64,000 bases of DNA from Octopus sinensis (Eukaryota), in the NCBI RefSeq assembly GCF_006345805.1, contig NC_043019.1, forward strand, positions 15,995,360 to 16,059,359, read 5' to 3'. The first letter of the stretch is position 1. The number at the start of each line of letters is the position of its first letter. The position numbers and the translations under genes are program-made. Of the stretch, positions 8,805 through 64,000 are shown piece after piece. The notes below the pieces were generated by a model. The model was not told where the DNA came from, did not search any database, and saw only the letters and a program-made list of their open reading frames with translations.

Positions 8805-8826
8805 AGTATGTGTGTATTCATGTATG

Positions 8827-8860
<34 letters not shown>

Positions 8861-9880: not shown

Positions 9881-9920
9881 GGGGTGGAGACAAACATAGA
9901 CACACACACACACACACACT

Positions 9921-20790: not shown

Positions 20791-20832
<42 letters not shown>

Positions 20833-20837
20833 CGTCG

Positions 20838-20912
<75 letters not shown>

Positions 20913-21063
20913 CCACCACCACCACCATCATCATCATTATTGACATCTTCATGGCCGTAATCATCATCGTCGTCATCGTCATTATCATCATCATCGTCGT
21001 CGTCGTCATCACCATCATCATCATCATCATCATCACCATCATCACCGTCGTCATCATCATCAT
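20791..21063. repeat. Compound (CGT)n/(CAT)n/(CAC)n trinucleotide array
   Basis: Read directly; source of the poly-Asp/poly-Met ORFs. Confidence 0.95.
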
Positions 21064-21401
21064 TATTTTCCAATTCAAGTAGTTCGCCAGACCATTCCAT
21101 CCCACTCCATTCCTTCAGACCTTCATAAAGAATTGGCTCGTTTTTCGCTCTTGACGAAGCAGTCTCCAACAAGAACTGAATATTATAGTTTCCATTAGAA
21201 GGAGCAACAAAACGATACAAGAGTGGAAACCAAACTACACGGCTCATTAAGTATTCAATTAAGACAGAAATATGCCGGGCAAGCTTCACTTCATTCTCTA
21301 TTCCGACGATAGGTATAATACAGGTGTGTGTGTTTGTGTGTGTGTGTGTGTGAGAGAGAGTGTGTGTGTAAGTGTGCGTGTGAGTGTGTGTGTGTAAGTT
21401 T

Positions 21402-21446
<45 letters not shown>

Positions 21447-21731
21447 TCTGTGTGTTTGTGTATGTTGATATATGAGCACATATACATACATAATACATCT
21501 ATAAAACATATATACATATACACACATACACACATACACACACATATATGAATACATTATATGCATCTATGTAATATATATATACACAAGCATAAATATA
21601 TTTATGCATACTCATATAGACATATATATGTATGTGCGTGTACGTGCACACATGTGTATTTACAAATGCGTTTATTAAGTTATCCATGTATACGTATACA
21701 TCTACATAGTCATATAGTTATGCATATATGC

Positions 21732-23261: not shown

Positions 23262-23559
23262 TCAGTTCGTTGTGGCGCTTTATTTAGCAGAAAATTTAAA
23301 ATGCTAAACTAAATACTTGTAGTTTTTAAATTCTGCTTTTGGCAAAGATTGTAAATGGATGGCGGAAAGAAAAATAATTATTATTAAGTTTATTCACTTG
23401 CCACTTATTCAAAATTGAGGCAGCACAAGTCATATGTGAAAACCTTAACATGGGAACAGTCCAACTGCTAGACACGGTAGCTAAGTCTCCCTCAAACTGC
23501 ATTTTTCTGCTTTAAGAAAAGGACTCTTTAATTGATCTGCTACCTGGAGTGATTGTGTA

Positions 23560-23712
23560 GCAAGATGATTGCTTTCCAATCACATGGTCCCAAGTCCAGT
23601 GCCACTGTGTGACTCCTTGGGCAAGTGTTGTCTACTATAGCACCAGGTCATTCAAAGCTTTGAGAGTGGGTTTGGTTGACAGAAACTGAAAGAAAGCCCA
23701 TCATATATATAT
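23560..23712 (+). mobile_element. SINE family B head, interrupted at its (TA)n
   Basis: TGCTTTCCAATCACATGGT...CCACTGTGTGACTCCTTGGGCAAGTGT...CTACTATAGC...ACAGAAACTGAAAGAAAGCCCATCATATATA. Confidence 0.7.
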
Positions 23713-35837: not shown

Positions 35838-35935
35838 ACGGGGTTCCACACAGCTTCCGTCCGCCAAATTCACTCACAAGACATTGCCGTGCAGTAGGAC
35901 TGAACCTGAAGCCACATGATTGCAAAGCGATCTCC
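35838..35935 (-). mobile_element. Internally deleted SINE family B head
   Basis: CACAGCTTCCGTCCGCCAAATTCACTCACAAG joined to GCAGTAGGACTGAACC...CCACATG. Confidence 0.55.
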
Positions 35936-36300: not shown

Positions 36301-36488
36301 AGTTCGGTTGGAGTGTAGTGTTTTAATCTGTCACTCATTCACCATGTAAACTGGGTTACGCTGCCGCCTCATGGCTCTTAAAGATCATGACAAATCTAAC
36401 TCAAGGCTTGTAACGACTCAAGCTAGAAGACATTTGTGGAATGGGCAGAGCAACAAGATCGAACACAGAAGTATATGATAGCGAATGA

Positions 36489-36657
36489 GAGGCTGTGTAG
36501 TAAGTAGCTTGCTTACTAACCACATGGTTCCGGGTTCAGTCCCACTGCGTGGCACTATGGGCAAGTGTCTTCTACTATAGCCTCGGGAACACCAAAGTCT
36601 TGTGAGTGGATTTGGAAGACAGAAACTGAAAGAAACCTGTCGTATATATGTATATAT
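36489..36657 (+). mobile_element. Well-preserved SINE family B head directly abutting the satellite
   Basis: GGCTGTGTAGTAAGTAGCTTGCTT...GGTTCCGGGTTCAGTCCCACTGCGTGGCAC...GGGCAAGTGTCTTCTACTATAGCCTCGGG...GAAACTGAAAGAAACCTGTCGTATATATGTATATAT, then GTGAGTGCAGTG. The 3' half is absent. Confidence 0.85.
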
Positions 36658-45600: not shown

Positions 45601-48600
45601 GTGAGTGCAGTGAGTGTAGTGACTGCAGTGAGTGAAGTGAGTGCAGTGAATGCAGTGAGTACTGCGAGTGAATGCAGTGAATGAAGGGAGTGCATTGAAT
45701 GCAGGGAATGCAGTGGGAGCAGTGAGTGAGTGCAGTGAGTGTAGTGAATGCAGTGAGTGAAGTGAGTGCAGTGAGTGTAGTGAGTGCAGTGAGTGTAGTG
45801 AATGCAGTGAGAGAAGTGAGTGCAGTGAATGCAGTGAGTACTGTGAGTGAATGCAGTGAATGAAGGGAGTGCATTGAATGCAATGGGAGCAGTGAGTGAG
45901 TGCAGTGAGTGTAGTGAATGCAGTGAGTGAAGTGAGTGCAGTGAGTGTAGTGAGTGCAGTGAGTGTAGTAAATGCAGTGACTTAAGTGAGTGCAGTGAAT
46001 GCAGTGAATACTGTGAGTGAATGCAGTGAATGAAGGGAGTGCATTGAATGCAGGGAATGCAGTGGGAGCAGTGAGTGAGTGCATTGAGTGTAGTGAATGC
46101 AGTGAGAGAAGTGAGTGCAGTGAATGCAGTGAGTACTGTGCGTGAATGCTGTGAATGAAGGCATTGCATTGAATGCAGGGAATGCAGTGGGAGCAGTGAG
46201 TGAGTGCAGTGAGTGAAGTGAAAGCAGTGAGTGAAGTGAAAGCAGTGAGTGTAGTGATTGCAGTGAGTGTAGTGAATGCAGTGAGTGAAGCGAGTGCAGT
46301 GAATGCAGTGAGTACTGTGAGTGAATGCAGTGAATGAAGGTAGTGCATTGAATGCAGGGAATGCAGTGGGAGCAGTGAGTGAGTGAAGTGAATGCAGTGA
46401 GTGAAGTAAGTGCAGTGAATGCAGTGAGTACAGTGAGTGAATGCAGTGAATGAAGGGAGTGCATTGAATGCAGGGAATGCAGTGGGAGCAGTGACTGAGT
46501 GCAGTGAGTGTAGTGAATGCAGTGAGTGAAGTGAGTACAGTGAGTGCAGTGAGTATAGTGAATGCAGTGAGAGAAGTGAGTGCAGTGAATGCAGTGAGTA
46601 CTGTGAGTGAATGTAGTGAATGAAGGGACTGCATTGAATGCAGGGAATGCAGTGGGAGCAGTGAGTGAGTGCAGTGAGTGTAGTCAGTGCAGTGAGTGTA
46701 GTGAATGCAGTGAGTGAAGTGAGTGCAGTGAATGCAGTGAGTACTGTGAGTGAATGCAGTGAATGAAGGGAGTGCATTGATTGCAGGGGATGCAGTGGGA
46801 GCAGTGAGTGAGTGTAGTGAATGCAGTGAGTACCGTGAGTGAATACAGTGTATGAAGGGAGTGCATTGAATTCAGGGAATGCAGTGGGAGCAGTGAGTCA
46901 GTGATGTGAGTGTAGTGAGTGTAGTGAATGCAGTGAGTGAAGTGAATGCAGTGAGTGTAGTGAATGCAGTGAGAGAAGTGAGTGCAGTGAATGCAGTGTG
47001 TATTGTGAGTGAATGCAGTGAATGAAGGGAGTGCATTGAATGCAGGGAATGCAGTGGGAGCAGTGAGTGAGTGCAGTGAATGTAGTGAATGCAGTGAGTG
47101 AAGTGAGTGCAGTGAGTGTAGTGAGTGCAGTAAGTGTAGTGAATGCAGTGAGTGAAGTGAGTGCAGTGAGTACTGTGAGTGAATGCAGTGAATGAAGGGA
47201 GTGCATTGAATGCAGGGAATGCAGTGGGAGCAGTGAGTGAGTGCAGTGAATGCAGTGAGTACTGTGAGTGAATGCAGTGAATGAAGGGAGTGCATTGAAT
47301 GCAGGGAATGCAGTGGGAGCAGTGAGTGAGTGCAGTGAGTGTAGTGAATGCAGTGAGTGAAGTGCGTGCAGTGAGTGTAGTGAATGCAGTGAGAGATGTG
47401 AGTGCAGTGAATGCAGTGAGTACTGAGAGTGAATGCAGTGAATGAAGGGAGTGCATTGAATGCAGGGAATGCAGTGGGAGCAGTGAGTGAGTGCAGTGAG
47501 TGTAGTGAATGCAGTGAGTGAAGTGAGTGCAGTGAGTGTAGTGAGTGCTGTGAGTGTAGTAAGCAGTGAGTGGGAAAGTGAGTGCATTGAATGCAGTGAT
47601 TACTGCGAGTGAATGCAGTGAAGAAGGGAGTGCATTGAATGCAGGGAATGCAGTGGGGCAGTGAGTGAGTGCACAGTGAGTGTAGTGAATGCAGTGATGA
47701 AGTGAGAGCAGTGGAGGTAGTGTGTGCAGTGAGTGTAGTGGAGTGCATGAGTGTAGTGAATGCAGTGAAGAAGTGAGTGCAGTGAATGCAGTGAGTACGT
47801 GAGAGAATGGCATGAATAAGGGAGTGCATGAATGCAATGGTAGCGGTGAGTGAGTGCAGTGAGTGTAGTGAATGCTGTGAGTGAAGTGAGTGCAGTGAGT
47901 GTAGTGAATGCAATGAGTGTAGTAAATGCAGTGAGTTAAGTGAGTGCAGTTAATGCAGTGAGTACTGTGAGTGAATGCAGTGAATGAAGGGAGTGCATTG
48001 AATGCAGGGAATGCAGTGGGAGCAGTGAGTGAGTGCAGTGAGTGTAGTGAATGCAGTGAGAGAAGTGAGTGCAGTGAATGCAGTGAGTACTGTGTGTGAA
48101 TGCAGTGAATGAAGGCAGTGCATTGAATGCAGGGAATGCAGTGGGAACAGTGAGTGTAGTGAATGCAGTGAGTGAAGTGAGTGCAGTGAGTGTAGCGATT
48201 GCAGTGAGTGTAGTGAATGCAGTTAGTGAAGTGAGTGCAGTGAATGCAGTGAGTACTGTGAGTGAATGCAGTGAATGAAGGTAGTGCATTGAATGCAGGG
48301 AATGCAGTGGGAGCAGTGAGTGAGTGAAGTGAATGCAGTGAGTGAAGTGAATGCAGTGAAGGCAGAGAGTACTGTGAGTGAATGCAGTGAATGAAGGGAG
48401 TGCATTGAATGCAGGGAATGCAGTGGGAGCAGTGACTGAGTGCAATAAGTGTAGTGAATGCAGTGAGTGAAGTGAGTGCAGTGAGTGTAGTGAATGCAGT
48501 GAGAGAAGTGAGTGCAGTGAATGCAGTGAGTACTGTGAGTGAATGCAGTGAATGAAGGGACCGCATTGAATACAGGGAATGCAGTGGGAGCAGTGAGTGA

Positions 48601-51600
48601 GTGCAGTGAGTGTAGTGAATCAGTGAGTGAAGTGAGTGCAGTGAGTGTAGTGAGTGCAGTGAGTGTAGTGAATAGGGTGAGTGAAGTGAGTGCAGTGAGT
48701 GTAGTGAATGCAGTGAGTGTAGTGAATGCAGTGAGTGAAGTGAGTGCAGTGAATGCAGTGAGTACTGTGAGTGAATGCAGTGAATGAAGGGAGTGCATTG
48801 AATGCAGGGAATGCAGTGGGAGCAGTGAGTGAGTGTAGTGAATGCAGTGAGTGAAGTGAGTGCATTGAATGCAGTGAGTACTGTGAGTGAATGCAGTGAA
48901 TGAAGGGAGTGCATTGAATGCAGTGGGAGCAGTGAGTGAGTGCAGTGAGTGAGTGCAGTGAGTGTAGTGAATGCAGTGAGTGAAGTGAGAGCAGTGAGTG
49001 TAGTGAATGCAGTGAGAGAAGTGAGTGCAGTGAATGCAGTGAGTACTGAGAGTGAATGCAGTGAATGAAGGGAGAGCATTGCATGCAGGAAATGCAGTGG
49101 GAGCAGTGAGTGAGTGCATTGAGTGTAGTGAATGCAGTGAGTGAAGTGAGTGCAGTGAGTGTAGTGAGTGCAGTGAGTGTAGTGAATGCAGTGAGTGAAG
49201 TGAGTGCAGTGAATGCAGTGAGTACTGAGAGTGAATGCAGTGAATGAAGGGAGAGCATTGAATGCAGGAAATGCAGTGGGAGCAGTGAGTGAGTGCAGTG
49301 AGTGTAGTGAATGCAGTGAGTGAAGTGAGTGCAGTGAGTGTAGTGAGTGCAGTGAGTGTAGTGAATGCAGTGAGAGAAGTGAGTGCAGTGAATGCAGTGA
49401 GTACTGTGTGTGAATGCAGTGAATGAAGGGAGTGAATTGAATGCAGGGAATGCAGTGGGAGCAGTGAGTGAGTGTAGTGAATGCAATGAGTGAAGTGAGA
49501 GCAGTGAATGCAGTGAGTACTGTGAGTGAATAAAGTGAATGAAGGGAGTGCATTGAATGCAGGGAATGCAGTGGGAGCAGTGAGTGTAGTGAATGCAGTG
49601 AGTGAAGTGAGTGCAGTGAGTGTAGTGAGTGCAGTGAGTGTAGTAAATGCAGTGAGTGAAGTGAGTGCAGTGAATGCAGTGAGTACTGTGAGTGAATGCA
49701 GTGAATGAAGGGAGTGTATTGAATGCAGGGAATGCAGTGGGAGCAGTGAGTGAGTGTAGTGAATGCAGTGAGTGAAGTGAGTGCAGTGAATGCAGTGAGT
49801 ACTGTGAGTGAATAAATTGAATGAAGGGAGTGCATTGAATGCAGGGAAGCAGTGGACTGCAGTGAGTGAGTGTAGTGATGCAGTGACGTGAAGTGAGTGC
49901 AGTGAATGCAGTGAGTACTAGACTGATGTGAATAAATTGAATGAGGGAAATGTGAGTGCCTTGAATGCAGGGGATGCAGTGGTGAGCAGTGAGTGAGTGC
50001 AGTGAGTGTAGTGAATGCAGTGATGACAGTGAGTGCAAGATGTGAGTGAGTGAGTGCAGTAATCAGTGTAGTGAATGCAGTGAGTGAAGTGAGTGCAGTG
50101 AATGCAGTGAGTACTCTGAGTGATTGCAGTGAATGAAGGGAGTGCATTGATTGCAGTGAATGCAGTGGAGCCTGTGAGTGAGTGTAGTGAATGCAGTGAG
50201 TGAAGTGAGTGCAGTGATGCAGTGAGTGACTGTGGAGTAATGCAGTGAATGAAGGAGTGCATTGAATGCAGGAATATGCAGTGGTGGAGCAGTGAGTGAG
50301 TGTTGTGAATGCAGTGAGTGAAGTGAGTGCAGTGAAAGCAGTGAGTGCTGTGTGTGAATAAAGTGAATGAAGGGAGTGCATGGAATGCAGGGAATGCAGT
50401 GGGAGCAGTGAGTGAGTGCAGTGAGTGTAGCGAATGCAGTGAGTGAAGTGGGTGCAGTGAGTGTAGTGAATGCAGTGAGTGAAGTGAGTGCAGTGAGTGT
50501 AGTGAATGCAGTGAGTGAAGTGAGTGCAGTGAGTGTAGTGAATGCAGTGAGTGAAGTGAGTGCAGTAAGTGTAGTGAATGCAGTGAGTGAAGTGAGTGCA
50601 GTGAGTGTAGTGAATGCAGTGAGTGAAGTGAGTGCAGCGAATGCAGTGAATGCAGTAAGTACTGTGAGTGAATGCAGTGAATGAAGGGAGTGCATTAAAT
50701 GCAGGGAATGCAGTGGGAGCAGTGAGTGAGTGTAGTGAATGCAGTGAGTGAAGTGAGTGCAGTGAATGCATTGAGTACTGTGAGTGAATGCAGTGAATGA
50801 AGAGAGTGCATTGAATGCAGGGAATGCAGTGGGAGCAGTGACTGAGTGCAGTGAGTGTAGTGAATGCAGTGAGTGAAGTCAGTGCAGTGAGTGTAGTGAA
50901 TGCAGTGAGAGAAGTGGGTGCAGTGAATGCAGTGAGTACTGTGAGTGAATGCAGTGAATGAAGGGACTGCATTGAATGCAGGAAATGCAGTGGGAGCAGT
51001 GAGTGAGTGCAGTGTGTGTAGTGAATGCAGTGAGTGAAGTGAGTGCAGTGAGTGTAGTGAATGCAGTGAATGAAGTGAGTGCAGTGAATGCAGTGAGTAC
51101 TGTGAGTGAATGCAGTGAATGAAGGGAGTGCATTGAATGCAGGGAATGCAGTGGGAGCAGTGAGTGAGTGCAGTAAGTGTAGTGAATGCATTGAGTGAAG
51201 TGAGTGCAGTGAATGCAGTGAGTACTGTGAGTGAATGCAGTGAATGAAGTGAGTGCATTGATTGCAGGGAATGCAGTGGGAGCAGTGAGTGAGTGTAGTG
51301 AATGCACTGAGTGAAGTGAGTGCAGTGAATGCAGTGAGTACTGTGAGTGAATGCAGTGAATGAAGGGAGTGCATTGAATGCAGGGAATGCAGTGGGGGCA
51401 GTGAGTGAGTGCAGTGAGTGTAGTGAATGCAGTGAGTGAAGTGAGTGCAGTGAGTGTAGTGAATGCAGTGAGAGAAGTGAGTGCAGTGAATGCAGTGAGT
51501 ACTGTGAGTGAATGCAGTGAATGAAGGCAGTGCATTGAATACAGGGAATGCAGTGGGAGCAGTGAGTGAGTGCAATGAGTGTAGTGAATGCAGTTAGTGA

Positions 51601-54600
51601 AGTGAGTGCAGTGAGTGTAGTGAGTGCAGTGAGTGTAGTGAATGCAGTGAGTGAAGTGAGTGCAGTGAATGCAGTGAGTACTGTGAATCAATGCAGTGAA
51701 TGAAGGGAGTGCATTTAATGCAGGGAATGCAGTGGGAGCAGTGAGTGAGTGCAGTGAGTGTAGTGAATACAGTGAGTGAAGTGAGTGCAGTGAGTGTAGT
51801 GAGTGCAGTGAGTGTAGTGAATGCAGTGAGAGAAGTGAGTGCAGTGAATGCAGTGAGTACTATGAGTGAATGCAGTGAATGAAGGGAGTGCATTGAATGC
51901 AGGGAATGCAGTGGGAGCAGTGAGTGAGTGCAGTGAATGCAGTGAGTGAAGTGAGTGCAGTGAGTGTAGTGAGTGCAGTGAATGCAGTGAGTGAAGTGAG
52001 TGCAGTGAATGCAGTGAGTACTGTGAGTGAATGCAGTGAATGAAGGGAGTGCATTGAATTTAGTGAATGCAGTGGGAGCAGTGAGTGAGTGTAGTGAATG
52101 AAGTGAGTGAAGTGAGTGCAGTGAATGCAGTGAGTACTGTGAGTGAATAAAGTGAATGAAGGGAGTGCATTGAATGCAGGGAATGCAGTGGGAGCAGTGA
52201 GTGAGTGCAGTGAGTGTAGTGAATGCTGTGAGTGAAGTGAGTGCAGTGAATGTAGTGAATGCAGTGAGAGAAGTGAGTGCAATGAATGCAGTAATTTCTG
52301 TGAGTGAATGCAGTGAATGAAGGGAGAGCATTAAATACAGGGAATGCAGTGGGAGCAGTGAGTGTAGTGAATGCAGTGAGTGAAGTGAGTGCAGTGAGTG
52401 TAGTGAGTGCAGTGAGTGTAGTGAATGCAGTGAGTGAAGTGAGTGCAGTGAATGTAGTGAATGCAGTGAGAGAAGTGAGTGCAGTGAATGCAGTGAGTTC
52501 TGTGAGTGAATGCAGTGAATGAAGGGAGTGCACTGAATGCAGGGAATGCAGTGGGAGCAGTGAGTGTAGTGAATGCAGTGAGTGAAGTGAGTGCTGTGAG
52601 TGTAGTGAGTTCAGTGAGTGTAGTGAATGCAGTGAGTGATGTGAGTGCAGTGAATGCAGTGAGTACTGTGAGTGAATGCAGTGAATGAAGGGAGTGCATT
52701 GAATGCAGGGAATGCAGTGGGAGCAGTGAGTGAGTGCAGTGAGTGTAGTGAATGCAGTGAGAGAAGTGAGTGCAGTGAATGCAGTGTGTATTGTGAGTGA
52801 ATGCAGTGAATGAAGGGAGTGCATTGAATGCAGGGAATGCAGTGGGAGCAGTGAGTGAGTGCAGTGAGTGTAGTGAATGCAGTGAGTTAAGTGAGTGCAG
52901 TGAGTGTAGTGAGTGCAGTGAGTGTAGTGAATGCAGTGAGTGAAGTGAGTGCAGTGACTGCAGTGAGTACTGTGAGTGAATGCAGTGAATGAAGGGAGTG
53001 CATTGAATGCAGGGAATGCAGTGGGAGCAGTGAGTGAGTGCAGTGAGTGTAGTGAATGCAGTGAGAGAACTGAGTGCAGTGAATGCAGTGAGTACTGTGA
53101 GTGAATGCAGTGAATGAAGGGAGTGCATTGAATGCAGGGAATGCAGTGGGAGCAGTGAGTGAGTGCAGTGAGTGTAGTGAATGCAGTGAGTGAAGTGAGT
53201 GCAGTGAATGCAGTGAGTACTGTGAGTGAATGCAGTGAATGAAGGGAGTGCATTGAATGCAGGGAATGCAGTGGGAGCAGTGAGATAGTGAAGTGAGTGT
53301 AGTGAGTGAAGTCAGTGCAGTGAGTGTAGTGAGTGCAGTGAGTGATTTGAGAGAGTACAGTGAGTGATTGCAGTGAATGAGTGAGTGAGTGCATTGAGTG
53401 CGTAATTGAATGAGTGAGTGCAGAGAATGCGTGAGTGATTGCAGTGAATGCAGGGAGAGCAGTTCGTGAGTGCAGTGAGTGTGTGATTGCAGTGAGTGAG
53501 TGAGTGCAGTGCGTGAGTGAGTGAAGTGCGTGAGTGAGTGCAGTGAAGAAAGTGAGGGCAGTGAATGCAGGGCAGTGGGTGAGTGCAGTGAATGCAGTGA
53601 GAGCAGTGAGTGAGTGCAGTGAATGTAGTGAGAGCAGTGAGTGAGTGCAGTGAGTAAATGAGTGCTGTGAGTAAATGCAGTAGGTGAGTGAGTAAAGTGA
53701 GTTAAGTGAGTGAATTGTGTTAAGTGAGTGCTGTGATTACAGTGAGTGCGTGTAGTGAGTGACAGAAGTTAGTGCAGTTAGCAAGTGCAGTGTGTGAGGG
53801 AGTGTAGTGAATGAATGATGGAAGTGCAGATAGTGACTGAGTGCAGTGAGTGAATGCGGTGAATGAAGGGAGTGCAGTGAATGTAGGGAATGCAGTGGGA
53901 GTAGTGAGTGAGTGAAGTGAGTGCAGTGAGTGCAGTGAGTGTAGTGAGTGCTGTGAGTGAATGCAGTGAATGATGGGAGTGCAGTGAATCAAGGAATGCA
54001 GTGGGAGCAGTGAGTGAGTGTAGTGAGTGTAGTGAGTGAAGTGAGTGCAGTGAGTGTAGTGAGTGCAGTGAGTGTAGTGAATGCAGTGAGTGAAGTGAGT
54101 GCAGTGAGTGAATTGAGAGAGTACAGTGAGTGATTGCAGTGAATGAGTGAGTGAGTGAGTGCATTGATTGCGTAATTGAATGAGTGAGTGCAGAGAATGA
54201 GTGAGTGATTGCAGTGAATGCAGGGAGAGCAGTTCTTGAGTGCAGTGAGTGCAGTGCGTGAGTGAGTGAAGTGAAGAAAGTGAGGGCAGTGAGTGAGTGC
54301 AGTGAGTGCAGTGTGTGAATGCAGTGAATGAAGGGAGTGCAGTGAATGCAGGGGGAGCAGTGAGTGAGTGAAGTGACTGTAGTGAGTGCAGTGAGTGTAG
54401 TGAGTGCAGCAGTGAATGCAGGGGGAGCAGTGAGTGAGTGAGTGAGTGAGTGTAGTGAGTGCAGTGAATGAGTGAGGCATTGAGTGCAGTAATAGAGTGA
54501 GTGAGTTCAGTGGGTGCAGAGAATGAGTGAGTGATTGCAGTGAATGCAGGGAGAGCAGTGCGTGAGTGCAGTGCGTGCAATGCGTGAGTGAGTGCAGTGA

Positions 54601-56322
54601 AGGAAGTGGAGGCAGTGAGTGAGTGCAGTGAAGGAAGTGGGGGCAGTGAGTGAGGGCAGTGGGTGAGTGCAGTGAATGCAGTGAATGAAGTGAGTGCAGT
54701 GAGAGCAGTGAGTGTGTGAGTGCAGTGAGCGAGTGAATGAGTGCAGTGAGTGAGTGCTGTGAGTGAATGAGTGCAGGAAGTCAGTGAGTGCAGTGATTAC
54801 AGTGAGTGAGTGAAGTGAGTGTAGTGAGTGATAGAAGTTAGTGCAGTGAGCAAGTGCAGTGTTTGAGGGAGTGTAGTGAATGAAGTGATGGAAGTGCAGA
54901 TAGTGACTGAGTGCAGTGAGTGAATGCAGTGAATGGAGGGAGTGCAGTGAATGTAGGGAATGCAGTGGGAGCATTACAGTGAGAGAGTACAGTGCGTGAG
55001 TGATGTAAGTGAGTGAGTGCAGTGAGTGCAGTGAGTGTGTGAGTGCAGTGAGTGCGTGAGTGCAGTGAATGCAGTGAGTGAATGCAGTGAATGAAGGGAG
55101 TGTAGTGAATGCAGGGAATGCAGTGGGAGCAGTGAGTGAGTGAAGTGAGTGTAGTGTGTGAAGTGAGTGTAGTGAGTGCAGTGAGTGAGTAAAGTGAGTG
55201 CTGTGTGTGTAGTGAGTAAAGTGAGTGCAGTGTGTGCAGTGAGTGAGTGTAGTGATTGCAGTGGGTGATGGAGTGCAGTGAGAGAGTAAGTGAGTGCAGT
55301 GAGTGAAGTGAGTGAGTGCAGTAAGTGAGTGAGTGTAGTGAATGCAGTGTGTGAGTGAGGCATTGAGTGCAGTAATAGAGTGAGTGAGTGCAGTACGTGC
55401 AGAGAATGAGTGAGTGATTGCAGTGAATGGAGGCAGAGCAGTGCGTGAGTGCAGTGCGTGAGTGAGTGCAGTGAAGGAAGTGAGGGCAGTGGGGGAGTGC
55501 AGTGAATGCAGTGGGTGAGTGAGTGCAGTGAGAGAGTAATTGAGTGCAGTTAGTGAAGTGAGAGAGTACAGTGAGTGAGTGATGTAAGTGAGTGAGTGCA
55601 GTGAGTGAGTGAGTGCATTGAGTGCAGTAAAAGTGCAGTGAGTTCATTGAGTGCAGAGAATGAGTGAGTGATTGCAGTGAATGCAGGGAGAGCAGTGCGT
55701 GAGTGCTGTGCGTGAGTGAGTGCAGTGAAGGAAGTGAGTGCAGTGAGTGAGTGTAGTGAATGCAGTGAGTTAGTGCGTGCAGTGTGAGAGTAAGTGAGTG
55801 CAGTGAGTGAGTGAGTGCAGTGAGTGAATTCAGTGAATGAAGCGAGTGCAGTGAGTGCGTGAGCGCAGTGTGTGAGTGCAGTGCAGTGCATGCAGTGAGT
55901 GCAGTGAGTGAGTGAGTGCAGTGAGCGAGTGCAGTGAGTAAGAGCAGTGAGTGCAGTGAGTGAGTGAATGGATGCAGTGACTGAGTTCAGTGAGAGCAGT
56001 GAGTGAAGTGAGTGAGTGAAGAGGGTGCAGTGAGTAAGTGAGTGTAGTGAGTGAGTGAGTAAGGTGGGTGCAGTGAGTGAGTGAGTGCTGTGAGTGCGTG
56101 AGTGCAGTGAATGCAGTGAGTGTAGTGAATGCAGTGAGTGAGTGCAGTGAATGTAGTGAGTGCATTCAGTGCCTGAGTGCAGTGGGTGAGTGACTGTAGT
56201 GAATACAGAGAGTGAAGTGAGTGAGTGCAGTGATTGCAGTGAGTGCAGTGATTGCAGTGACTGAGTGAGTGTAGTGAGTGAGTGAGTGCAGTGAGCGCAG
56301 TGAATTAAGTGAGTGCAGTGAA
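36658..56322. repeat. ~19.7-kb complex satellite of 9-mers (GCAGTGAGT / GTAGTGAAT / GAAGTGAGT) with a 125+9n-bp higher-order unit
   Basis: Invariant 85-bp core GCAGTGAAT GCAGTGAGT ACTGTGAGT GAAT GCAGTGAAT GAAGGGAGT GCATTGAAT GCAGGGAAT GCAGTGGGA GCAGTGAGT plus a variable 9-mer run. GAAGGGAG spacings measured at 52687, 52812, 52991, 53116 and 53241 are 125, 179, 125 and 125. Confidence 0.95.
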
Positions 56323-56620
56323 TTCGTTGAGAGTGCAGGAACCAACTGATACGACTCAAAGACGATAGATTAGCTTAGAATGTTATCGTCTGCTAAAACT
56401 GGAAGAAAGGAAAATTCGGTTGTTTCCGGATAATTCCGGTTTGAACTTCGTTTGTGAAATAACTGTGATGAGTGAGTGTGTGTGGGTATGTGTGTGGGTG
56501 TGTGTGAGTGAGAGAGAGAGAGAGAGAGAAAAGAGAAACACTGTGTGGTTAGAGAGAGAGTAAGAGAGAAAGAAGAGAGAGAAGGAAGGAGAGGGAGAGA
56601 GAAGAGAAAGAGTGAAAGAT

Positions 56621-57110
56621 AGGGATATAAAAACATCTTCTCCCATCGAACAACCGGTCTAAATTGTAGCCTCAATAATATGAAGCATTAAATTGTTAAA
56701 CACCAACCGAAGCTAGAATGGTGGAAGCGCAGAGAGTTCCAAAGAATTTAAGAATTCAACGAAATATTTGACAGCCTCTGCCGGATCTGGAACTAAATCT
56801 ATAGATATATATGGTTTTACATACCTGTATATTTCCTGAAATACGATACAATAACTTACTATTTATGCTATTGACAGCCCTTTCACGTAAATACTTGTGA
56901 TTTTGCTGGTGGTTCTGGAAATTTGGAAACACTCTTGCTAATAAGTTCATCGAACGATGAATCTGATGTACTAATAAGAGATGTATCTAAATGGTCATCT
57001 TCATCAAGGAGTACCTTACCTTCTCCGTGTTCCAGTAAATTCTGAGCGATTTCTTTAGCAAAATAATTGCCCGAAAACAATTCGGCTCTCATATTCTTAC
57101 TTAGGCTTAT
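56621..57110 (-). pseudogene. Helitron RepHel PIF1-helicase fragment, unit 1
   Basis: LSKNMRAELFSG...EIAQNLLEHGEGKV...FDELI / RVFPNFQNHQQNHKYLRERAV / AEAVKYFVEFLNSLELSALPPF*LRL...HIIEATI*TGCSMGEDVFI. Collinear with the Helitron PIF1 pattern (L..NMR...F...LL.IG.G; VFP...ERAIL; YP.EFLNSL..SG.PPH; IEATI.TG...GEDVFIP), with 2 frameshifts, stops and internal deletions. Confidence 0.88.
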
Positions 57111-57145
57111 ACATACATATATACATACATACATACATACATACA

Positions 57146-57179
<34 letters not shown>

Positions 57180-57290
57180 CATACATACATACATACATAC
57201 ATACATACATACATACATAATACATACATACATATGCACACATATATACATACATACATACATGCATGCATGCATACATACATACATACA

Positions 57291-57324
<34 letters not shown>

Positions 57325-57476
57325 CATAAGCATATAAGCACAAACACTTATCGATAAATATATAGATAGATAGATATGTATGATAGTTATATATATATAT
57401 AGATAGATACATGTGTGTGTGCATATGTTCATACATATAAACATACACACACACACACACATATATATAGAGCAGT

Positions 57477-57525
57477 TGTATACTGTCAACTTCATGGGTC
57501 TGTCACGTTAAGTTGACAGTATACA
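57477..57525. repeat. 16-bp perfect inverted repeat with 17-nt loop, one per tandem unit
   Basis: TGTATACTGTCAACTT / AAGTTGACAGTATACA; also at 59228-59276, 61043-61104 (22-bp form) and 62786-62834. Confidence 0.93.
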
Positions 57526-58179
57526 TCTCCTCTATCGTCCCACCACTGCTTATATCTCTTTCAGATATTTAGAAACGTAATATTTATATTTATATATATA
57601 TATATATATAGCATAGCTGTACACACGCGTGTATGCATGTGAATGTAAGCTAGACATAAGGAGAGAAGAAATATAGAGAAGTGCAGGAGTGACCTGAAAG
57701 ACACTTTTTAGAAATAATTTAATTTTCTTTCACATTTTTCAACGAATTTAATAAGATATTCTACTTCACTTCAAACTTGATGTCTTCGCGAACAGAACAG
57801 AAATTCTCATCTCAAATATCAACACCAAAGACTGATAAGCGATTGAACAATACCAGTTCCTCCTCTTTAGAAAGCGGTCTTTTCTTACTTTATGATAGAT
57901 GAGTGGCTAATTACAGTTTTATAAAGATGTAATGAGTATTTTTGAATGAAGTTAATAGGGAACTTTACCTTCGATGCTGACATGAGACGTCTCCTTCGTT
58001 GAGAGTGCAGGAACCAACTGATACGACTCAAAGACGATGGTTTAGCTTAGAAAGTTATCGTCTGCTAAAACTGGAAGAAAGGAAAATTCGGTTGTTTCCG
58101 GATAATTCCGGTTTGAACTTCGTTTGTGAAATAACTGTGAGTGAGTGAGTGAGTGTGTGGGTATGTGTGTGTGTGAGAT

Positions 58180-58225
<46 letters not shown>

Positions 58226-58444
58226 TAGAAGAGAGGTAGAGAGAGATAGAAGATTGAGAGAGAGAAAAGGAGTCTCTGTGTTAGAGAGAGAGTAAGAGAG
58301 AAGAGAAAGAGAGAAGAGAGAGAGAAAGAGAGAAGAGAGAGAGAAAGAGAGAAGAAAGGAGTCTCTGTGTTAGAGAGAGAGAGTAAGAGAGAAAGAGAAA
58401 GAGAAGAGAGAGAGAGAGGGACAGAGAGAGAAAGAGTGAAAGAG

Positions 58445-58934
58445 AGGGATATAAAAACATCTTCTCCCATAGAACAACCGGTCTAAATTGTAGCCTCAAT
58501 AATATGAAGCATTAAATTGTTAAACACCAACCGAAGCTAGAATGGTGGAAGCGCAGAGAGTTCCAAAGAATTTAAGAATTCAACGAATTATTTGACAGCC
58601 TCTGCAGGATCTGGAACTAAATCTATAGATATATATGGTTTTACATACCTGTATATTTCCTGAAATACGATACAATAACTTACTATTTATGCTATTGACA
58701 GCCCTTTCACGTAAATACTTGTGATTCTGCTGGTGGTTCTGGAAATTTGGAAACACTCTTGCTAATAAGTTCATCGAATGATGAAACTGATGTACAAATA
58801 AGAGATGTATCTAAATGGTCATCTTTATCAAGGAGTACCTTACCTTCTCCGTGTTCCAGTAAATTCTGAGTGATTTCTTTAGCAAAATAATTGCCCGAAA
58901 ACAATTCGGCTCTCATATTCTTAGTTAGGCTTAT
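58445..58934 (-). pseudogene. Helitron PIF1-helicase fragment, unit 2
   Basis: Same motifs and lesions as unit 1 (ORFs 58707..59246 and 58580..58774). Confidence 0.88.
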
Positions 58935-58985
58935 ACATACATACATACATACATACATACATACATACATACATACATACATACA

Positions 58986-59019
<34 letters not shown>

Positions 59020-60201
59020 CATACATACATACATACATATACATACATACATACATATATACATAAGCATATATATATGCATATAAGCATATATGCACAA
59101 ACACTTATAGATAGATAGATAGATAGATACGTATGATAGTTAATATATATATATATAATCGATGTGTGTGTACATATGTTCATACATATAAACATACACA
59201 CACACACACATATATATATAGAGCAGTTGTATACTGTCAACTTCATGGGTCTGTCACGTTAAGTTGACAGTATACATCTCCTCTATCGTCCCACCACTGC
59301 TTATATCTCTTTCAGATATTTAGAAACGTAATTATATATATATATTATATATATATATATATAATATATATATATATATATTATATATATAGCATAGCTG
59401 TACACACGCGTGTATGCATGTGAATGTAAGCTAGACATAAGGAGAGAAGAAATATAGAGAAGTGCAGGAGTGACCTGAAAGACACTTTTCAAGAAATAAT
59501 TTAATCTTTTTTCAACGAATTTAATAAGATATTCTACGTTCACTTCAAACTTGATGTCTTCGCGAACAGAACAGAAATTCTTATCTCCAAATATCAACAC
59601 CAAAGACTGATAAGCGATTGAACAATACCAGTTTCCTCTTTAGAAAGCTGTCTTTTCTTACTTTATGATAGATGACTGGCTAATTACAGTTTTATAAAGA
59701 TGTAATGAGTATTTTTGAATGAAGTTAATAGGGAACTTTACCTTCAATGCTGACATGAGACGTCTCCTTCGTTGAGAGTGCAGGAACCAACTGATACGAC
59801 TCAAAGACGATGTTTAGCTTAGAAAGTTATCGTCTGCTAAAACTGGAAGAAAGGAAATTCGGTTGTTTCCGGATAATTCCGGTTTGAACTTCGTTTGTGA
59901 AATAACTGTGAGTGAGTGAGTGAGTGAGTGTGTGGGTATGTGTGTGTGTGAGAGAGAGAGAGGAGAGAAGAGAGGGAGGTAGAAGAGGGAGCGAGAAGAG
60001 ATAGAAGAGAGGGAGAGAGAGACAGAATATATATATAGAGAAAAATAGTCTCTGTGTTAGAGAGAGAGTAAGAGAAAAGAGAGAGAGAGAAGAGAGATAG
60101 AGAGAGAGAGAAAAAAAGTGTCTGTGTTAGAGAGAGAATAAGAGAGAAAGAGAGAGAGAAGGAAGGGACAGAGAGAGAGAGAGAGAGAAAGAGTGAAAGA
60201 T

Positions 60202-60661
60202 AGGGATATAAAAACATCTCCCATAGAACAACCGGTCTAAATTTTGTTAAACACCAACCGAAGCTAGAATGGTGGAAGCGCAGAGAGTTCCAAAGAATTT
60301 AAGAATTCAACGAATTATTTGACAGCCTCTGCCGGATCTGGAACTAAATCTATAGATATATATGGTTTTACATACCTGTATATTTCCTGAAATACGATAC
60401 AATAACTTACTATTTATGCTATTGACAGCCCTTTCACGTAAATACTTGTGATTTTGCTGGTGGTTCTGGAAATTTGGAAACACTCTTGCTAATAAGTTCA
60501 TCGAATGATGAAACTGATGTACAAATAAGAGATGTATCTAAATGGTCATCTTTATCAAGGAGTACCTTACCTTCTCCGTGTTCCAGTAAATTCTGAGCGA
60601 TTTCTTTAGCAAAATAATTGCCCGAAAACAATTCGGCTCTCATATTCTTACTTAGGCTTAT
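60202..60661 (-). pseudogene. Helitron PIF1-helicase fragment, unit 3
   Basis: Same motifs (ORFs 60434..60739, 60307..60501), plus a ~27-bp deletion between TAAATT repeats. Confidence 0.86.
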
Positions 60662-60836
60662 ACATACATATATACATACATACATATGCACACATACATA
60701 CATACATACATAAGCATATATATATATGCATATAAGCATATATGCACAACCACTTATAGATAGATAGATAGATAGATACGTATGATAGTTTTATATATAT
60801 ATATATGTATAAGGGTGGAAAGGAACACACGAGTTG

Positions 60837-60950
60837 ATATATATGAAAAAACAGTCAAAAATAGAAAATGCTAAGATGATTTTATAGTGAATCTTTCACT
60901 ATAAAATCCTCTTAGCATTTTCTATTTTTGACTTGTTTTTTCATATATAT
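60837..60950. repeat. ~114-bp palindrome inserted in the (TA)n of unit 3 only
   Basis: ATATATGAAAAAAC(A)AGTCAAAAATAGAAAATGCTAAGA(T/G)GATTTTATAGTGAA arms with a TCT loop, 1 mismatch and 1 indel. Absent from units 1, 2 and 4. Confidence 0.9.
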
Positions 60951-60952
60951 AT

Positions 60953-60989
<37 letters not shown>

Positions 60990-61126
60990 TGTGTGTGTGT
61001 GCATATGTTCATACATATAAACAAAGAGACACACATATATGGAGCAGTTTGTATACTGTCAACTTCATGGGACTGTCACATTAAGTTGACAGTATACAAC
61101 TGCTGTATCTAATATTTATATTTATA

Positions 61127-61183
<57 letters not shown>

Positions 61184-61992
61184 CATAGCTGTACACACGT
61201 GTATGCATGTGAATGTAAGCTTAGACATAAGGAGAGAAGAAATATAGAGAAGTGCAGGAGTGACCTGAAAGACACTTTCAAGAAATAATTTAATTTTCTT
61301 TCACATTTCAACGAATTTAATAAGATATTCTACGTTTACTTCAAACTTGATGTCTTCGCGAACAGAACAGAAATTCTCATCTCCAAATATCAACACCAAA
61401 GACTGATAAGCGATTGAACATACCAGTTTCCTCTTTAGAAAGCGGTCTTTTCTTACTTATGATAGATGAGTGGCTAATTACAGTTTTATAAAGATGTAAT
61501 GAGTATTTTTTAATGAAGTTAATAGGGAACTTTACCTTCAATGCTGACATGAGACGTCTCCTTCGTTGAGAGTGCAGGAACCAACTGATACGACTCAAAG
61601 ACGATGGTTTAGCTTAGAAAGTTATCGTCTGCTAAAACTGGAAGAAAGGAAAATTCGGTTGTTTCCGGATAATTCCGGTTTGAACTTCGTTTGTGAAATA
61701 ACTGTGAGTGAGTGAGTGAGTGAGTGTGTGGGTATGTGTGTGTGTGAGAGAGAGAGAGGAGAGAAGAGAGGGAGGTAGAAGAGGGAGCGAGAAGAGATAG
61801 AAGAGAGGGAGAGAGAGACAGAATATATATATAGAGAAAAATAGTCTCTGTGTTAGAGAGAGAGTAAGAGAAAAGAGAGAGAGAGAAGAGAGATAGAGAG
61901 AGAGAGAAAAAAAGTGTCTGTGTTAGAGAGAGAATAAGAGAGAAAGAGAGAGAGAAGGAAGGGAGAGGAGAGAGAGAGAAAGAGTGAAAGAT

Positions 61993-62474
61993 AGGGATAT
62001 AAAAACATCTTCTCCCATAGAACAACCGGTCTAAATTGTAGCCTCAATAATATGAAGCATTAAATTGTTAAACACCAACCGAAGCTAGAATGGTGGAAGC
62101 GCAGAGAGTTCCAAAGAATTTAAGAATTCAACGAAATATTTGACAGCCTCTGCCGGATCTGGAACTAAATCTATAGATATATATGGTTTTACATACCTGT
62201 ATATTTCCTGAAATACGATACAATAACTTACTATTTATGCTATTGACAGCCCTTTCACGTAAATACTTGTGATTTTGCTGGTGGTTCTGAAAATTTGGAA
62301 ACACTCTTGCTAATAAGTTCATCGAATGATGAAACTGATAAGAGATGTATCTAAATGGTCATCTTCATCAAGGAGTACCTTACCTTCTCCGTGTTCCAGT
62401 AAATTCTGAGTGATTTCTTTAGCAAAATAATTGCCCGAAAACAATTCGGCTCTCATATTCTTACTTAGGCTTAT
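61993..62474 (-). pseudogene. Helitron PIF1-helicase fragment, unit 4
   Basis: Same motifs (ORFs 62319..62804, 62128..62322), with a small extra deletion near 62338. Confidence 0.86.
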
Positions 62475-62605
62475 ACATACATATATACATACATACATAT
62501 ATACATACATATATACATACATACATACATACATACATACATACATGCATGCATGCATACATACATACATACATGCATGCATGCATACATACATACATAC
62601 ATACA

Positions 62606-62639
<34 letters not shown>

Positions 62640-62888
62640 CATAAGCATATAAGCACAAACACTTATCGATAAATATATAGATAGATATGTATGATAGTTA
62701 TATATATATATAGATAGATACATGTGTGTGTGCATATGTTCATACATATAAACATACACACACACACACATATATATAGAGCAGTTGTATACTGTCAACT
62801 TCATGGGTCTGTCACGTTAAGTTGACAGTATACATCTCCTCTATCGTCCCACCACTGCTTATATCTCTTTCAGATATTTAGAAACGTA

Positions 62889-62943
<55 letters not shown>

Positions 62944-63781
62944 ATATATATTATATATATAGCATAGCTGTACACACGCGTGTATGCATGTGAATGTAAG
63001 CTAGACATAAGGAGAGAAGAAATATAGAGAAGTGCAGGAGTGACCTGAAAGACACTTTTCAAGAAATAATTTAATTTTCTTTCACATTTTTCAACGAATT
63101 TAATAAGATATTCTACGTTCACTTCAAACTTGATGTCTTCGCGAACAGAACAGAAATTCTCATCTCCAAATATCAACACCAAAGACTGATAAGCGATTGA
63201 ACAATACCAGTTTCCTCTTTAGAAAGCGGTCTTTTCTTACTTTATGATAGATGAGTGGCTAATTACAGTTTTATAAAGATGTAATGAGTATTTTTTAATG
63301 AAGTTAATAGGGAACTTTACCTTCAATGCTGACATGAGACGTCTCCTTCGTTGAGAGTGCAGGAACCAACTGATACGACTCAAAGACGATGGTTTAGCTT
63401 AGAAAGTTATCGTCTGCTAAAACTGGAAGAAAGGAAAATTCGGTTGTTTCCGGATAATTCCGGTTTGAACTTCGTTTGTGAAATAACTGTGAGTGAGTGA
63501 GTGAGTGTGTGGGTATGTGTGTGTGTGAGATAGAGAGAGAAGAGAGAGAGAGAGAGAGGTAGAAGAGGGAGCGAGAAGAGATAGAAGAGAGGGAGAGAGA
63601 GACAGAATATATATATAGAGAAAAATAGTCTCTGTGTTAGAGAGAGAGTAAGAGAAAAGAGAGAGAGAGAAGAGAGATAGAGAGAGAGAGAAAAAAAGTG
63701 TCTGTGTTAGAGAGAGAATAAGAGAGAAAGAGAGAGAGAAGGAAGGGACAGAGAGAGAGAGAGAGAGAAAGAGTGAAAGAT

Positions 63782-64000
63782 AGGGATATCTCCCATAGAA
63801 CAACCGGTCTAAATTTTGTTAAACACCAACCGAAGCTAGCTAGAATGGTGAAGCGCAGAGAGTTCCAAAGAATTAAGAATTCAACGAATTATTTGACAGC
63901 CTCTGCAGGATCTGGAACTAAATCTATAGATATATATGGTTTTACATACCTGTATATTTCCTGAAATACGATACAATAACTTACTATTTATGCTATTGAC
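63782..64000 (-). pseudogene. Helitron PIF1-helicase fragment, unit 5 (cut by window end)
   Basis: Same sequence as the other units; shares the deletion seen in unit 3. Confidence 0.8.

What the first reader, a model, noticed from the sequence alone, without database searches (positions are those of the whole stretch)
56323..64000. Macrosatellite amplifying a dead Helitron helicase fragment
Seen: at least 4.4 tandem ~1.75-kb units, each with ~490 bp of PIF1-helicase sequence carrying the same frameshifts, stops and internal deletions. The fragment therefore died before amplification. No Rep domain and no clear TC/CTAG termini lie in the unit. Established: Helitrons replicate by a rolling-circle mechanism, can form tandem arrays and capture host DNA. 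Inference: either rolling-circle amplification of a composite non-autonomous Helitron in trans, or ordinary unequal crossover. Its position against a 20-kb satellite suggests a heterochromatic or pericentromeric domain.
Basis: partly seen in the sequence, partly recalled or inferred. Interest (0 to 1): 0.7.

Follow-up and report, generated by a model that had tools for sequence, protein, structure and literature searches.

The report
Tandem repeat carrying a dead Helitron fragment
A 1.7-1.8 kb stretch of junk DNA holding a long-dead piece of a Helitron transposon helicase has been copied head-to-tail at least 4.4 times, most likely by ordinary local duplication; this kind of repeat is common in repeat-rich animal genomes.

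Summary
From 56323 to the window end lie 4.37 head-to-tail units of 1672, 1773, 1794 and 1785 bp, then 654 bp. Their non-microsatellite parts are 96.4-100% identical, except for a rearranged stretch in unit 3.

Each unit carries about 480 bp, on the minus strand, of a PIF1-like helicase. The fragment covers about 190 of 1539 positions of a Rep-helicase profile. Every unit has the same two frameshifts, stop codons and internal deletions, so the fragment was dead before it was amplified. Its relatives are Octopus PIF1-like proteins, and 6 of 8 long relatives also carry the Helitron Rep domain, so a Helitron origin is supported.

Nothing supports the rolling-circle reading. The window has no Rep sequence, and neither strand of a unit has a GC-rich hairpin followed by CTRR. 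No copy of the unit lies elsewhere in the window. The helicase piece is one island among microsatellites, a small foldback and unidentified sequence.

The best reading is local tandem duplication and unequal exchange of ordinary repeat-rich DNA, probably in an octopod genome. Genome-wide mapping and the right end of the array could not be tested. The pericentromeric inference is untested. Interest is low.

The parts
56323..64000 (.). Tandem array (macrosatellite). It holds 4.37 units and runs off the right end of the window.
   Evidence: Anchors at 56323, 57995, 59768, 61562 and 63347; self-BLAST; repeat families.
56323..57994 (.). Unit 1 (1672 bp). Order of parts: 146-bp unique segment A, (GTGA)n/(GA)n, helicase relic B, (ATAC)n, foldback C, (TA)n, about 390-bp unique segment D. 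Its GA tract is shorter than in the other units.
57995..59767 (.). Unit 2 (1773 bp).
59768..61561 (.). Unit 3 (1794 bp). It has a private palindromic insertion, a rearranged ATAC region, and a 27-bp deletion in the helicase relic that it shares with unit 5.
61562..63346 (.). Unit 4 (1785 bp). It has a private 8-bp deletion in the helicase relic.
63347..64000 (.). Unit 5, partial (654 bp), cut by the window end.
56623..57110 (-). Helitron-type PIF1 helicase relic of unit 1. Three colinear pieces lie in three frames, running from about the 'NMR' motif to 'GEDVFIS' after the 2B domain.
58447..58937 (-). Helicase relic of unit 2.
60228..60661 (-). Helicase relic of unit 3 (27-bp deletion).
61995..62474 (-). 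Helicase relic of unit 4. The 8-bp deletion puts most of it in one frame.
63796..64000 (-). Helicase relic of unit 5. Only its C-terminal part lies inside the window.
57467..57535 (.). 69-bp foldback with 26-nt arms and a 17-nt loop, lying between CA/TA microsatellites. The same element is at 59218-59286, 61040-61108 and 62776-62844.
60837..60950 (.). Palindrome of about 114 bp (arms of at least 46 nt, 93% complementary), present only in unit 3. It is most likely a MITE or foldback insertion made after amplification.
36658..56321 (+). 19.7-kb degenerate satellite that abuts the first unit directly. The consensus is GTGAGTGCA, the period is 9 bp, and GC skew is about +0.68.
36460..36640 (+). 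Dispersed SINE-like repeat. The satellite begins at its 3' tail. Other copies lie at 15005-15149 (-), 23554-23695 (+) and 12259-12385 (+).

Best explanation
This is a young, locally generated macrosatellite. A stretch of about 1.75 kb of ordinary repeat-rich intergenic DNA, probably in an octopod genome, was duplicated in tandem. Unequal crossing-over or replication-based exchange then expanded and partly homogenised the array.

The duplicated stretch was a mosaic. It held unidentified unique sequence, three microsatellite tracts, a small foldback, and an old, badly decayed fragment of a Helitron helicase gene. That fragment already had frameshifts, stops and internal deletions.

The helicase relic is a passenger. 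It encodes nothing, and it is neither the cause of the amplification nor evidence of its mechanism.

Shown: the array, the identity of the relic, its shared defects, and the absence of Rep and of canonical ends.

Inferred: the recombinational mechanism, the lack of function, and a rough age of 1-3 million years.
For: 1. Head-to-tail units are 96.4-100% identical in their unique parts, while the helicase relic shares only about 34-45% of residues with its best relatives. The relic is broken the same way in every unit. Decay therefore long preceded amplification.
2. The relic covers only about positions 1262-1450 of a 1539-position RepHel profile. Nothing else in the unit or the window matches Rep or helicase, even with HMMER filters off.
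3. Microsatellites bound the relic on both sides, (ATAC)n and (GA)n. The rest of the unit has no Pfam or Rfam match. This composition matches the surrounding 56 kb.
4. No GC-rich hairpin followed within 15 nt by CTRR exists on either strand of a full unit. The unit junction reads GACGTCTCC|TTCGTTGAG, which is not CTRR|TC.
5. Units carry private events, such as the 114-bp palindrome in unit 3 and the 8-bp deletion in unit 4. They also carry variants shared in conflicting patterns. Quartet partitions split 3:3:1, units 3 and 5 share a 27-bp deletion, and units 1 and 4 share the structure of the ATAC region. That is what exchange or conversion between units produces.
6. No unit segment occurs elsewhere in the window, although a dispersed SINE-like repeat shows 4 further copies in the same 64 kb.
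7. Satellites derived from transposon fragments by unequal exchange are well documented (review PMC12628747).
Against: - The mechanism is inferred and not demonstrated.
- The right end of the array lies outside the window, and the genome could not be searched. Dispersed copies with common ends cannot be excluded.
- Most substitutions are private to one unit, giving a nearly star-like pattern. A single-burst amplification of any kind, including rolling circle, would look the same.
- Non-canonical Helitron families lack CTRR ends, so my terminus scan does not exclude them.
Confidence: 0.75

Rival explanations
1. Rolling-circle amplification. Under this reading the unit is a truncated or composite non-autonomous Helitron that lost its terminator. 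An autonomous Helitron replicated it in trans into a concatemer, which then integrated beside the satellite. This is the model of Xiong, Dooner and Du (2016) for plant centromeric Helitron arrays.
For: - The unit contains Helitron-derived sequence.
- Helitrons exist in octopus genomes and were recently active there (PMC13282606).
- Tandem arrays of truncated Helitrons made this way are described in plants (PMC12628747).
- Variation between units is mostly private, as expected after a single burst.
- The array starts exactly at a unit boundary, although the duplication model predicts that too.
Against: - The window has no Rep sequence.
- No 5'-TC or hairpin-CTRR ends lie at the junction or anywhere in the unit on either strand.
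- The Helitron-derived part is a decayed mid-ORF fragment of 480 bp, not a terminus. Termini are what a non-autonomous element must keep.
- No other copy was found in any sequence I could search.
- Variants shared between non-adjacent units show later exchange in any case.
Confidence: 0.1
2. The array belongs to a larger organised satellite domain, pericentromeric or otherwise heterochromatic. Under this reading the 19.7-kb 9-bp satellite and the macrosatellite are maintained together. The biology of interest would be the chromatin domain and not the unit.
For: - A 19.7-kb satellite abuts the array directly.
- No gene was recognised anywhere in the window: the long ORFs are transposon relics or repeat artefacts.
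- A second octopus locus also shows a long satellite butted against a truncated Helitron helicase.
Against: - The 36 kb to the left is ordinary dispersed-repeat and microsatellite DNA.
- The satellite begins at the tail of a SINE-like repeat, which suggests local expansion of a microsatellite.
- No chromosomal position, chromatin data or copy-number data are available.
- About two thirds of an octopus genome is repeats (PMC13282606), so such neighbourhoods are not special.
Confidence: 0.1
3. The array is an assembly artefact. Under this reading the copy number or arrangement was produced by mis-assembly of a repeat.
For: Tandem repeats next to long satellites are prone to assembly error. I had no read data to check.
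Against: - Units differ by 0.5-2% in substitutions.
- Units also differ by distinct indels, different microsatellite lengths and a unit-specific 114-bp insertion.
- These are distinct physical copies, not a duplicated consensus.
Confidence: 0.05

Closest known systems
Transposon-derived satellite or macrosatellite DNA formed by tandem duplication and unequal exchange of transposon relics (reviewed in 'Satellite DNAs rising from the transposon graveyards', PMC12628747)
   Same: - A head-to-tail array whose monomer contains a fragment of a transposon coding region.
- High identity between units, with signs of exchange between them.
- A location in repeat-dense DNA next to another satellite.
   Different: - The unit is long (1.75 kb) and composite. 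Only about 27% of it is recognisably transposon-derived.
- Only 4.4 copies are seen.
- Genome-wide abundance is unknown, so it may be a single-locus repeat and not a satellite family.
Rolling-circle-amplified tandem arrays of truncated Helitrons in plant centromeres (Xiong, Dooner & Du 2016, as summarised in PMC12628747)
   Same: A tandem array whose units contain decayed Helitron sequence, lying beside satellite DNA.
   Different: - Those arrays repeat the Helitron 5' end and finish with a single 3' end.
- Here no Helitron end of either kind is detectable.
- The Helitron part here is an internal helicase fragment.
Helentron or Helitron non-autonomous elements carrying internal satellite-like arrays in oysters and Drosophila (Cg170/HINE, DINE-TR1; PMC7492417, PMC8268682, PMC4067079)
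   Same: Helitron-superfamily sequence is physically associated with tandem repeats in a mollusc genome.
   Different: - Those have short monomers of about 100-200 bp inside elements with conserved ends, dispersed in many copies.
- Here the Helitron piece lies inside the monomer, no ends are present, and no dispersal was seen.
- The long relatives I scanned showed no endonuclease domain, so they look like Helitrons proper, not Helentrons.
Octopus sinensis locus CM016887.1:3038901-3059668 (L001), the nearest named relative
   Same: A truncated Helitron helicase lies directly against a long satellite: a 69-bp unit in 144.6 copies, covering at least 9.9 kb.
   Different: - There the helicase piece is single-copy, 47% identical to a RepHel over 370 residues, mostly open, and outside the repeat unit.
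- There is no DNA similarity to the window.

Membership tests
Helitron (element, autonomous or non-autonomous) | Helicase of the PIF1 family most closely related to Helitron RepHel proteins | tested here: met
   Only as a relic fragment. Octopus PIF1-like proteins hit at E = 3e-8, my own HMMs give i-E of 4e-18 and 5e-10, and 6 of 8 long relatives carry Helitron_like_N + PIF1 + Pif1_2B.
Helitron (element, autonomous or non-autonomous) | Rep (HUH endonuclease, Helitron_like_N) domain, required for an autonomous element | tested here: not met
   tblastn of 15 long RepHel proteins and a 1539-position RepHel HMM run with --max match only profile positions of about 1262-1450.
Helitron (element, autonomous or non-autonomous) | 5'-TC start and a 3' GC-rich hairpin followed by CTRR | tested here: not met
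   A scan of a full unit plus both junctions on both strands found only AT-microsatellite palindromes and one 6-bp AT-rich stem. The junction reads ...GACGTCTCC|TTCGTTGAG.... Non-canonical families cannot be excluded.
Helitron (element, autonomous or non-autonomous) | Dispersed copies with common ends, inserted between host A and T without a target duplication | not testable with these tools
   No eukaryotic genome DNA search was available. Within reach there was no copy in window 1-56322 or L001, no identical ORF among 15 billion proteins, and no hit in two metagenome scans.
Rolling-circle-generated Helitron tandem array (Xiong 2016 type) | Multiple Helitron 5' ends and a single 3' end at one edge of the array | tested here: inconclusive
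   No recognisable 5' or 3' end lies in the units or at the left edge. The right edge lies beyond the window.
Macrosatellite / transposon-derived satellite | Head-to-tail tandem copies of a unit of at least 1 kb | tested here: met
   4.37 units of 1672-1794 bp.
Macrosatellite / transposon-derived satellite | High identity between units with evidence of exchange between units | tested here: met
   Unique segments are 96.4-100% identical, and informative sites conflict, with 3:3:1 quartet partitions and indels shared by non-adjacent units.
Macrosatellite / transposon-derived satellite | Large copy number, or presence as a genome-wide family | not testable with these tools
   The array runs off the window, and there is no genome or read-depth access.
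Helentron-carried satellite (oyster HINE/Cg170 type) | Short satellite monomers embedded between conserved Helentron termini | tested here: not met
   The monomer is 1.75 kb, no termini are present, and the long relatives I scanned showed no endonuclease domain.

The most novel reading that the evidence does not exclude
The array is a concatemer made by rolling-circle replication of a terminator-less, composite non-autonomous Helitron and integrated next to a satellite. To my knowledge that would be the first cephalopod example of the mechanism proposed for plant centromeric Helitron arrays. Together with the O. sinensis locus, where a satellite abuts a truncated Helitron, it would hint that Helitrons seed or spread tandem repeats in octopod genomes.
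Probability: 0.1. Interest if true: 0.4.

Novelty: new member of a known kind. Interest (0 to 1): 0.15.

Why it matters
This finding matters little on its own. It is one more case of a tandem repeat built from a transposon graveyard in a genome that is about two thirds repeats. It has some practical value. Gene predictors may call PIF1-like pseudo-ORFs of this kind, and the array marks an assembly-sensitive region. If genome-wide mapping showed dispersed arrays with common ends, it would become a useful animal test case for Helitron-driven tandem repeat formation.

Tried and rejected
- **Pfam and PDB on the stitched helicase translation, and Pfam on all six frames of a unit.** No meaningful hit. 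The fragment is too decayed for generic models, and identity came only from lineage-specific relatives.
- **Satellite-derived unit start.** I considered whether the first ~15 bp of each unit (GAGAGTGCAGGAA) derive from satellite monomers, which would place the duplication breakpoint inside the satellite. Shared 10-mers occur at the background rate of 3.6 per kb in unrelated DNA, and no match with up to 2 mismatches exists in the satellite. Rejected as not significant.
- **Foldback as a Helitron 3' hairpin.** The 69-bp foldback lies on the wrong side of the helicase relic, is AT-rich, sits between microsatellites, and has no CTRR after it. Rejected.
- **The stem AGACGAT...ATCGTCT followed by GCTAA in segment A.** It has an 18-nt loop, is followed by A and not T or TC, and sits in the middle of a conserved unique segment. 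I read this from the sequence; my scan did not cover loops this long. Not a terminus.
- **Exact look-up of six unit ORFs and two other window ORFs among 15 billion proteins.** None present.
- **Two exact-pattern scans of JGI metagenome contigs** (segment A and the foldback). Zero hits.
- **Rfam and ARAGORN on the whole window.** Nothing.
- **DNA comparison of unit segments with the O. sinensis helicase locus.** No similarity.
Full report

Yes. Tandem Repeats Finder cannot see periods above 500 bp. It showed only the microsatellites inside the region and the 19.7-kb satellite to the left, at 36658-56321. A self-BLAST of 56000-64000 gave E = 0 alignments at offsets of about 1.75, 3.55 and 5.35 kb. 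The repeat finder returned families of 3-5 copies spaced 1.73-1.82 kb apart.

The 17-mer TTCGTTGAGAGTGCAGG occurs at 56323, 57995, 59768, 61562 and 63347. This defines units of 1672, 1773, 1794 and 1785 bp and a 654-bp partial unit cut by the window end, or 4.37 units.

Each unit has the same order of parts on the plus strand:
- a 146-bp unique segment A
- (GTGA)n/(GA)n microsatellites
- a segment B of about 480 bp
- an (ATAC)n microsatellite
- a 69-bp foldback C, flanked by CA/TA repeats
- a (TA)n microsatellite
- a unique segment D of about 390 bp

In segments A, B and D the units are 96.4-100% identical. The mean pairwise substitution difference among the four complete units is about 1.2%.

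**2. Is segment B a helicase fragment?**

Generic models fail. Pfam found nothing with the stitched translation, PDB found nothing, and Pfam on all six frames of a unit found nothing.

Relatives do identify it. The stitched three-frame translation hit Octopus sinensis LOC115225981 at E = 3e-8 and an O. bimaculoides protein at E = 8e-5, against 5.8 billion sequences. Both are annotated with PF05970 (PIF1) and PF21530 (Pif1 2B domain). tblastn of these proteins hits every unit, down to E = 5e-15, and hits nothing else in the window.

I built an HMM from 120 PIF1-like proteins returned by the profile search. In each unit it matches three colinear pieces in three different minus-strand frames, at profile positions 158-216, 196-265 and 253-347 of 433. 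The i-E values go down to 4e-18.

The alignment to the Octopus proteins shows the following defects:
- two frameshifts
- stop codons inside 'PPF*LRL' and 'ATI*TGC'
- a deletion of about 8 residues at the 'ILAP' motif
- a 23-residue deletion that removes the 'VGxPIMLIRNL...NGTR' stretch

Segment B is 96-99% identical at the DNA level between units, so all of these defects are common to all units. Later changes are private or shared by only some units: an 8-bp deletion in unit 4 and a 27-bp deletion in units 3 and 5.

**3. Is it of the Helitron type?**

An exhaustive profile search of 1.84 billion representative proteins returned 13179 relatives. I scanned eight long ones with Pfam. Six carry Helitron_like_N + PIF1 + Pif1_2B, and none showed an endonuclease domain of the Helentron kind.

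The genomic locus of the closest named relative (L001, O. sinensis) aligns to a RepHel protein over residues 1243-1610 at 47% identity. The fragment therefore comes from a Helitron-type helicase.

It is only a small part of one. Against a 1539-position RepHel HMM run with all HMMER filters off, the window matches only positions of about 1262-1450. Fifteen long RepHel proteins give no Rep hit and no other helicase hit anywhere in the 64 kb.

**4. Is the unit a Helitron?**

The evidence says no.
- **No Rep sequence** is present.
- **No canonical 3' end.** I scanned a full unit with both junctions on both strands for a stem of at least 6 bp ending 1-15 nt before CTRR. Only AT-microsatellite palindromes and one weak AT-rich stem inside the helicase relic turned up.
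- **The junction is wrong.** It reads ...GACGTCTCC|TTCGTTGAG... and not CTRR|TC.
- **The foldback does not fit.** The 69-bp foldback present in every unit has 26-nt arms. It lies on the N-terminal side of the helicase relic, is AT-rich, and is embedded in microsatellites. It looks like a small MITE or foldback, not a Helitron terminator.
- **The rest of the unit is unidentified.** It has no Pfam or Rfam match.

The helicase relic is about 27% of the unit and is bounded on both sides by microsatellites. This is what an old relic looks like in this microsatellite-rich sequence.

**5. Where does the window come from, and what surrounds the array?**

The closest relatives of the helicase relic are Octopus proteins. 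A LINE zf-RVT relic at 19030-19704 (-) is 64% identical to a protein from the octopod Argonauta hians and 75% identical to an unnamed metagenome protein. A pogo/Tigger-like DDE_1 and HTH relic lies at 1757-2712 (-). I infer an octopod cephalopod host; the species was not determined.

The satellite (GTGAGTGCA)n has an autocorrelation of 0.65 at lag 9 and a GC skew of about +0.68. It begins within about 20 bp of the 3' end of a SINE-like repeat at 36460-36640, and it ends at 56321, directly against the first unit. The SINE-like repeat has four further copies or fragments in the window.

Nothing here tests a pericentromeric location. Published work puts repeats at about 66% of the Octopus vulgaris genome and reports recently active Helitron families (PMC13282606).

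**6. What mechanism made the array?**

Two things are established. The relic was dead and eroded before amplification, and the amplification is recent by comparison.

*Age.* The O. vulgaris repeat paper equates a Jukes-Cantor distance of 0.09 from consensus with 25 million years. On that scale, about 0.6% divergence per unit lineage gives roughly 1-3 million years. This is a rough inference.

*Pattern of variation.* Most substitutions are private to one unit. The few informative sites conflict: quartet partitions split 3:3:1, units 3 and 5 share a 27-bp deletion, units 1 and 4 share the structure of the ATAC region, and units 3 to 5 share the structure of the GA tract. This indicates exchange or conversion between units, the normal behaviour of tandem arrays.

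*Private insertion.* The 114-bp palindrome in unit 3 (60837-60950) shows that the copies are physically distinct and have existed long enough to receive an insertion.

*Dispersal.* No segment of the unit occurs elsewhere in the window or in the O. sinensis locus. None of six unit ORFs is present among 15 billion predicted proteins. Two exact-pattern scans of metagenome contigs were empty. These searches barely sample cephalopod genomes, so they are only weak evidence against dispersal.

*Weighing the two models.* I favour local tandem duplication followed by unequal exchange, with confidence of about 0.75. The rolling-circle model corresponds to a published mechanism for plant centromeric Helitron arrays (Xiong et al. 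2016, as summarised in PMC12628747). It needs Helitron ends in the unit, typically repeated 5' ends and one 3' end, and none is detectable. I give it about 0.1. The array does start exactly at a unit boundary, but both models predict that, so it does not discriminate.

**7. How does it compare with known things?**

It works like, and is best filed as, a transposon-relic-containing macrosatellite, a well-known kind (PMC12628747).

It is not a member of the Helitron element family as a unit. Rep and the termini were tested and not met, and only the helicase-relic criterion is met.

It also differs from the oyster and Drosophila Helentron-carried satellites. Those have short monomers inside elements with conserved ends (PMC7492417, PMC4067079).

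**8. What could not be done?**
- A genome-wide search for the unit.
- Extending the sequence to the right end of the array.
- Checking read depth or spanning reads.
- Comparing the orthologous locus in related species.
- Determining chromosomal position or chromatin state.

These are listed as decisive next steps.

**9. Verdict**

The Helitron-helicase identity and the 'dead before amplification' inference are supported. Rolling-circle amplification is unsupported and ordinary local duplication is favoured. The heterochromatin inference is untested. This is an ordinary feature of a repeat-rich genome and of low interest.

Noticed in passing
window 36658-56321: A 19.7-kb degenerate satellite with consensus GTGAGTGCA: 9-bp period, autocorrelation 0.65 at lag 9, a weak period of about 179 bp in TRF, and GC skew of about +0.68. 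It starts right at the TATATGT tail of a SINE-like repeat, which suggests it grew from a SINE-tail microsatellite.
   Followed up: partly
window 36460-36640; also 15005-15149 (-), 23554-23695 (+), 12259-12385 (+), 35851-35886 (-): A dispersed repeat of about 150-180 bp with a tRNA-like B-box motif (GGTTC...GTCC). From memory it resembles the abundant octopus SINEs. ARAGORN and Rfam do not call it.
   Followed up: partly
window 60837-60950 (unit 3 only): A near-perfect palindrome of about 114 bp (arms of at least 46 nt, 93% complementary) inside AT-rich microsatellite, absent from the other units. It is probably a MITE or foldback insertion made after the array formed. Unit 3 also has its ATAC region rearranged.
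   Followed up: partly
window 57467-57535, 59218-59286, 61040-61108, 62776-62844: A 69-bp foldback (26-nt arms, 17-nt loop) in every unit, flanked by CA/TA microsatellites. In unit 3 the arms pair further (GAGCAGTT...AACTGCT). Its origin is unknown; it may be a tiny MITE.
   Followed up: partly
L001 (Octopus sinensis CM016887.1:3038901-3059668) 1-9916 and 9923-11005: A 69-bp-unit satellite in 144.6 copies runs off the locus start and lies directly against a 5'-truncated Helitron helicase. That helicase matches RepHel residues of about 1243-1610 at 47% identity and is annotated as LOC115225981. This is a second case of a Helitron relic abutting a long satellite in an octopus. Whether the association exceeds chance is untested.
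   Followed up: partly
window 1757-2712 (-) and 19030-19704 (-): A pogo/Tigger-like transposase relic (DDE_1 at E = 1.6e-13, plus a weak Tc5 HTH match) and a LINE relic with a zf-RVT motif. The LINE relic's best named relative is from Argonauta hians (64%). No host gene was recognised among ORFs of at least 110 aa in 1-36600.
   Followed up: partly
window 1917-2202 (+): The C-terminal about 95 residues of database protein P0125 match here at 57-70% identity. P0125 is a 1086-aa protein with PIF1 and 2B domains. The match is on the strand opposite the DDE_1 ORF, so P0125 is probably a chimeric gene model that reads through a transposon relic.
   Followed up: no
window 20734-21541: Long trinucleotide-type low-complexity tracts that give poly-Asp and poly-Met/Thr ORF artefacts of up to 267 aa.
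   Followed up: no
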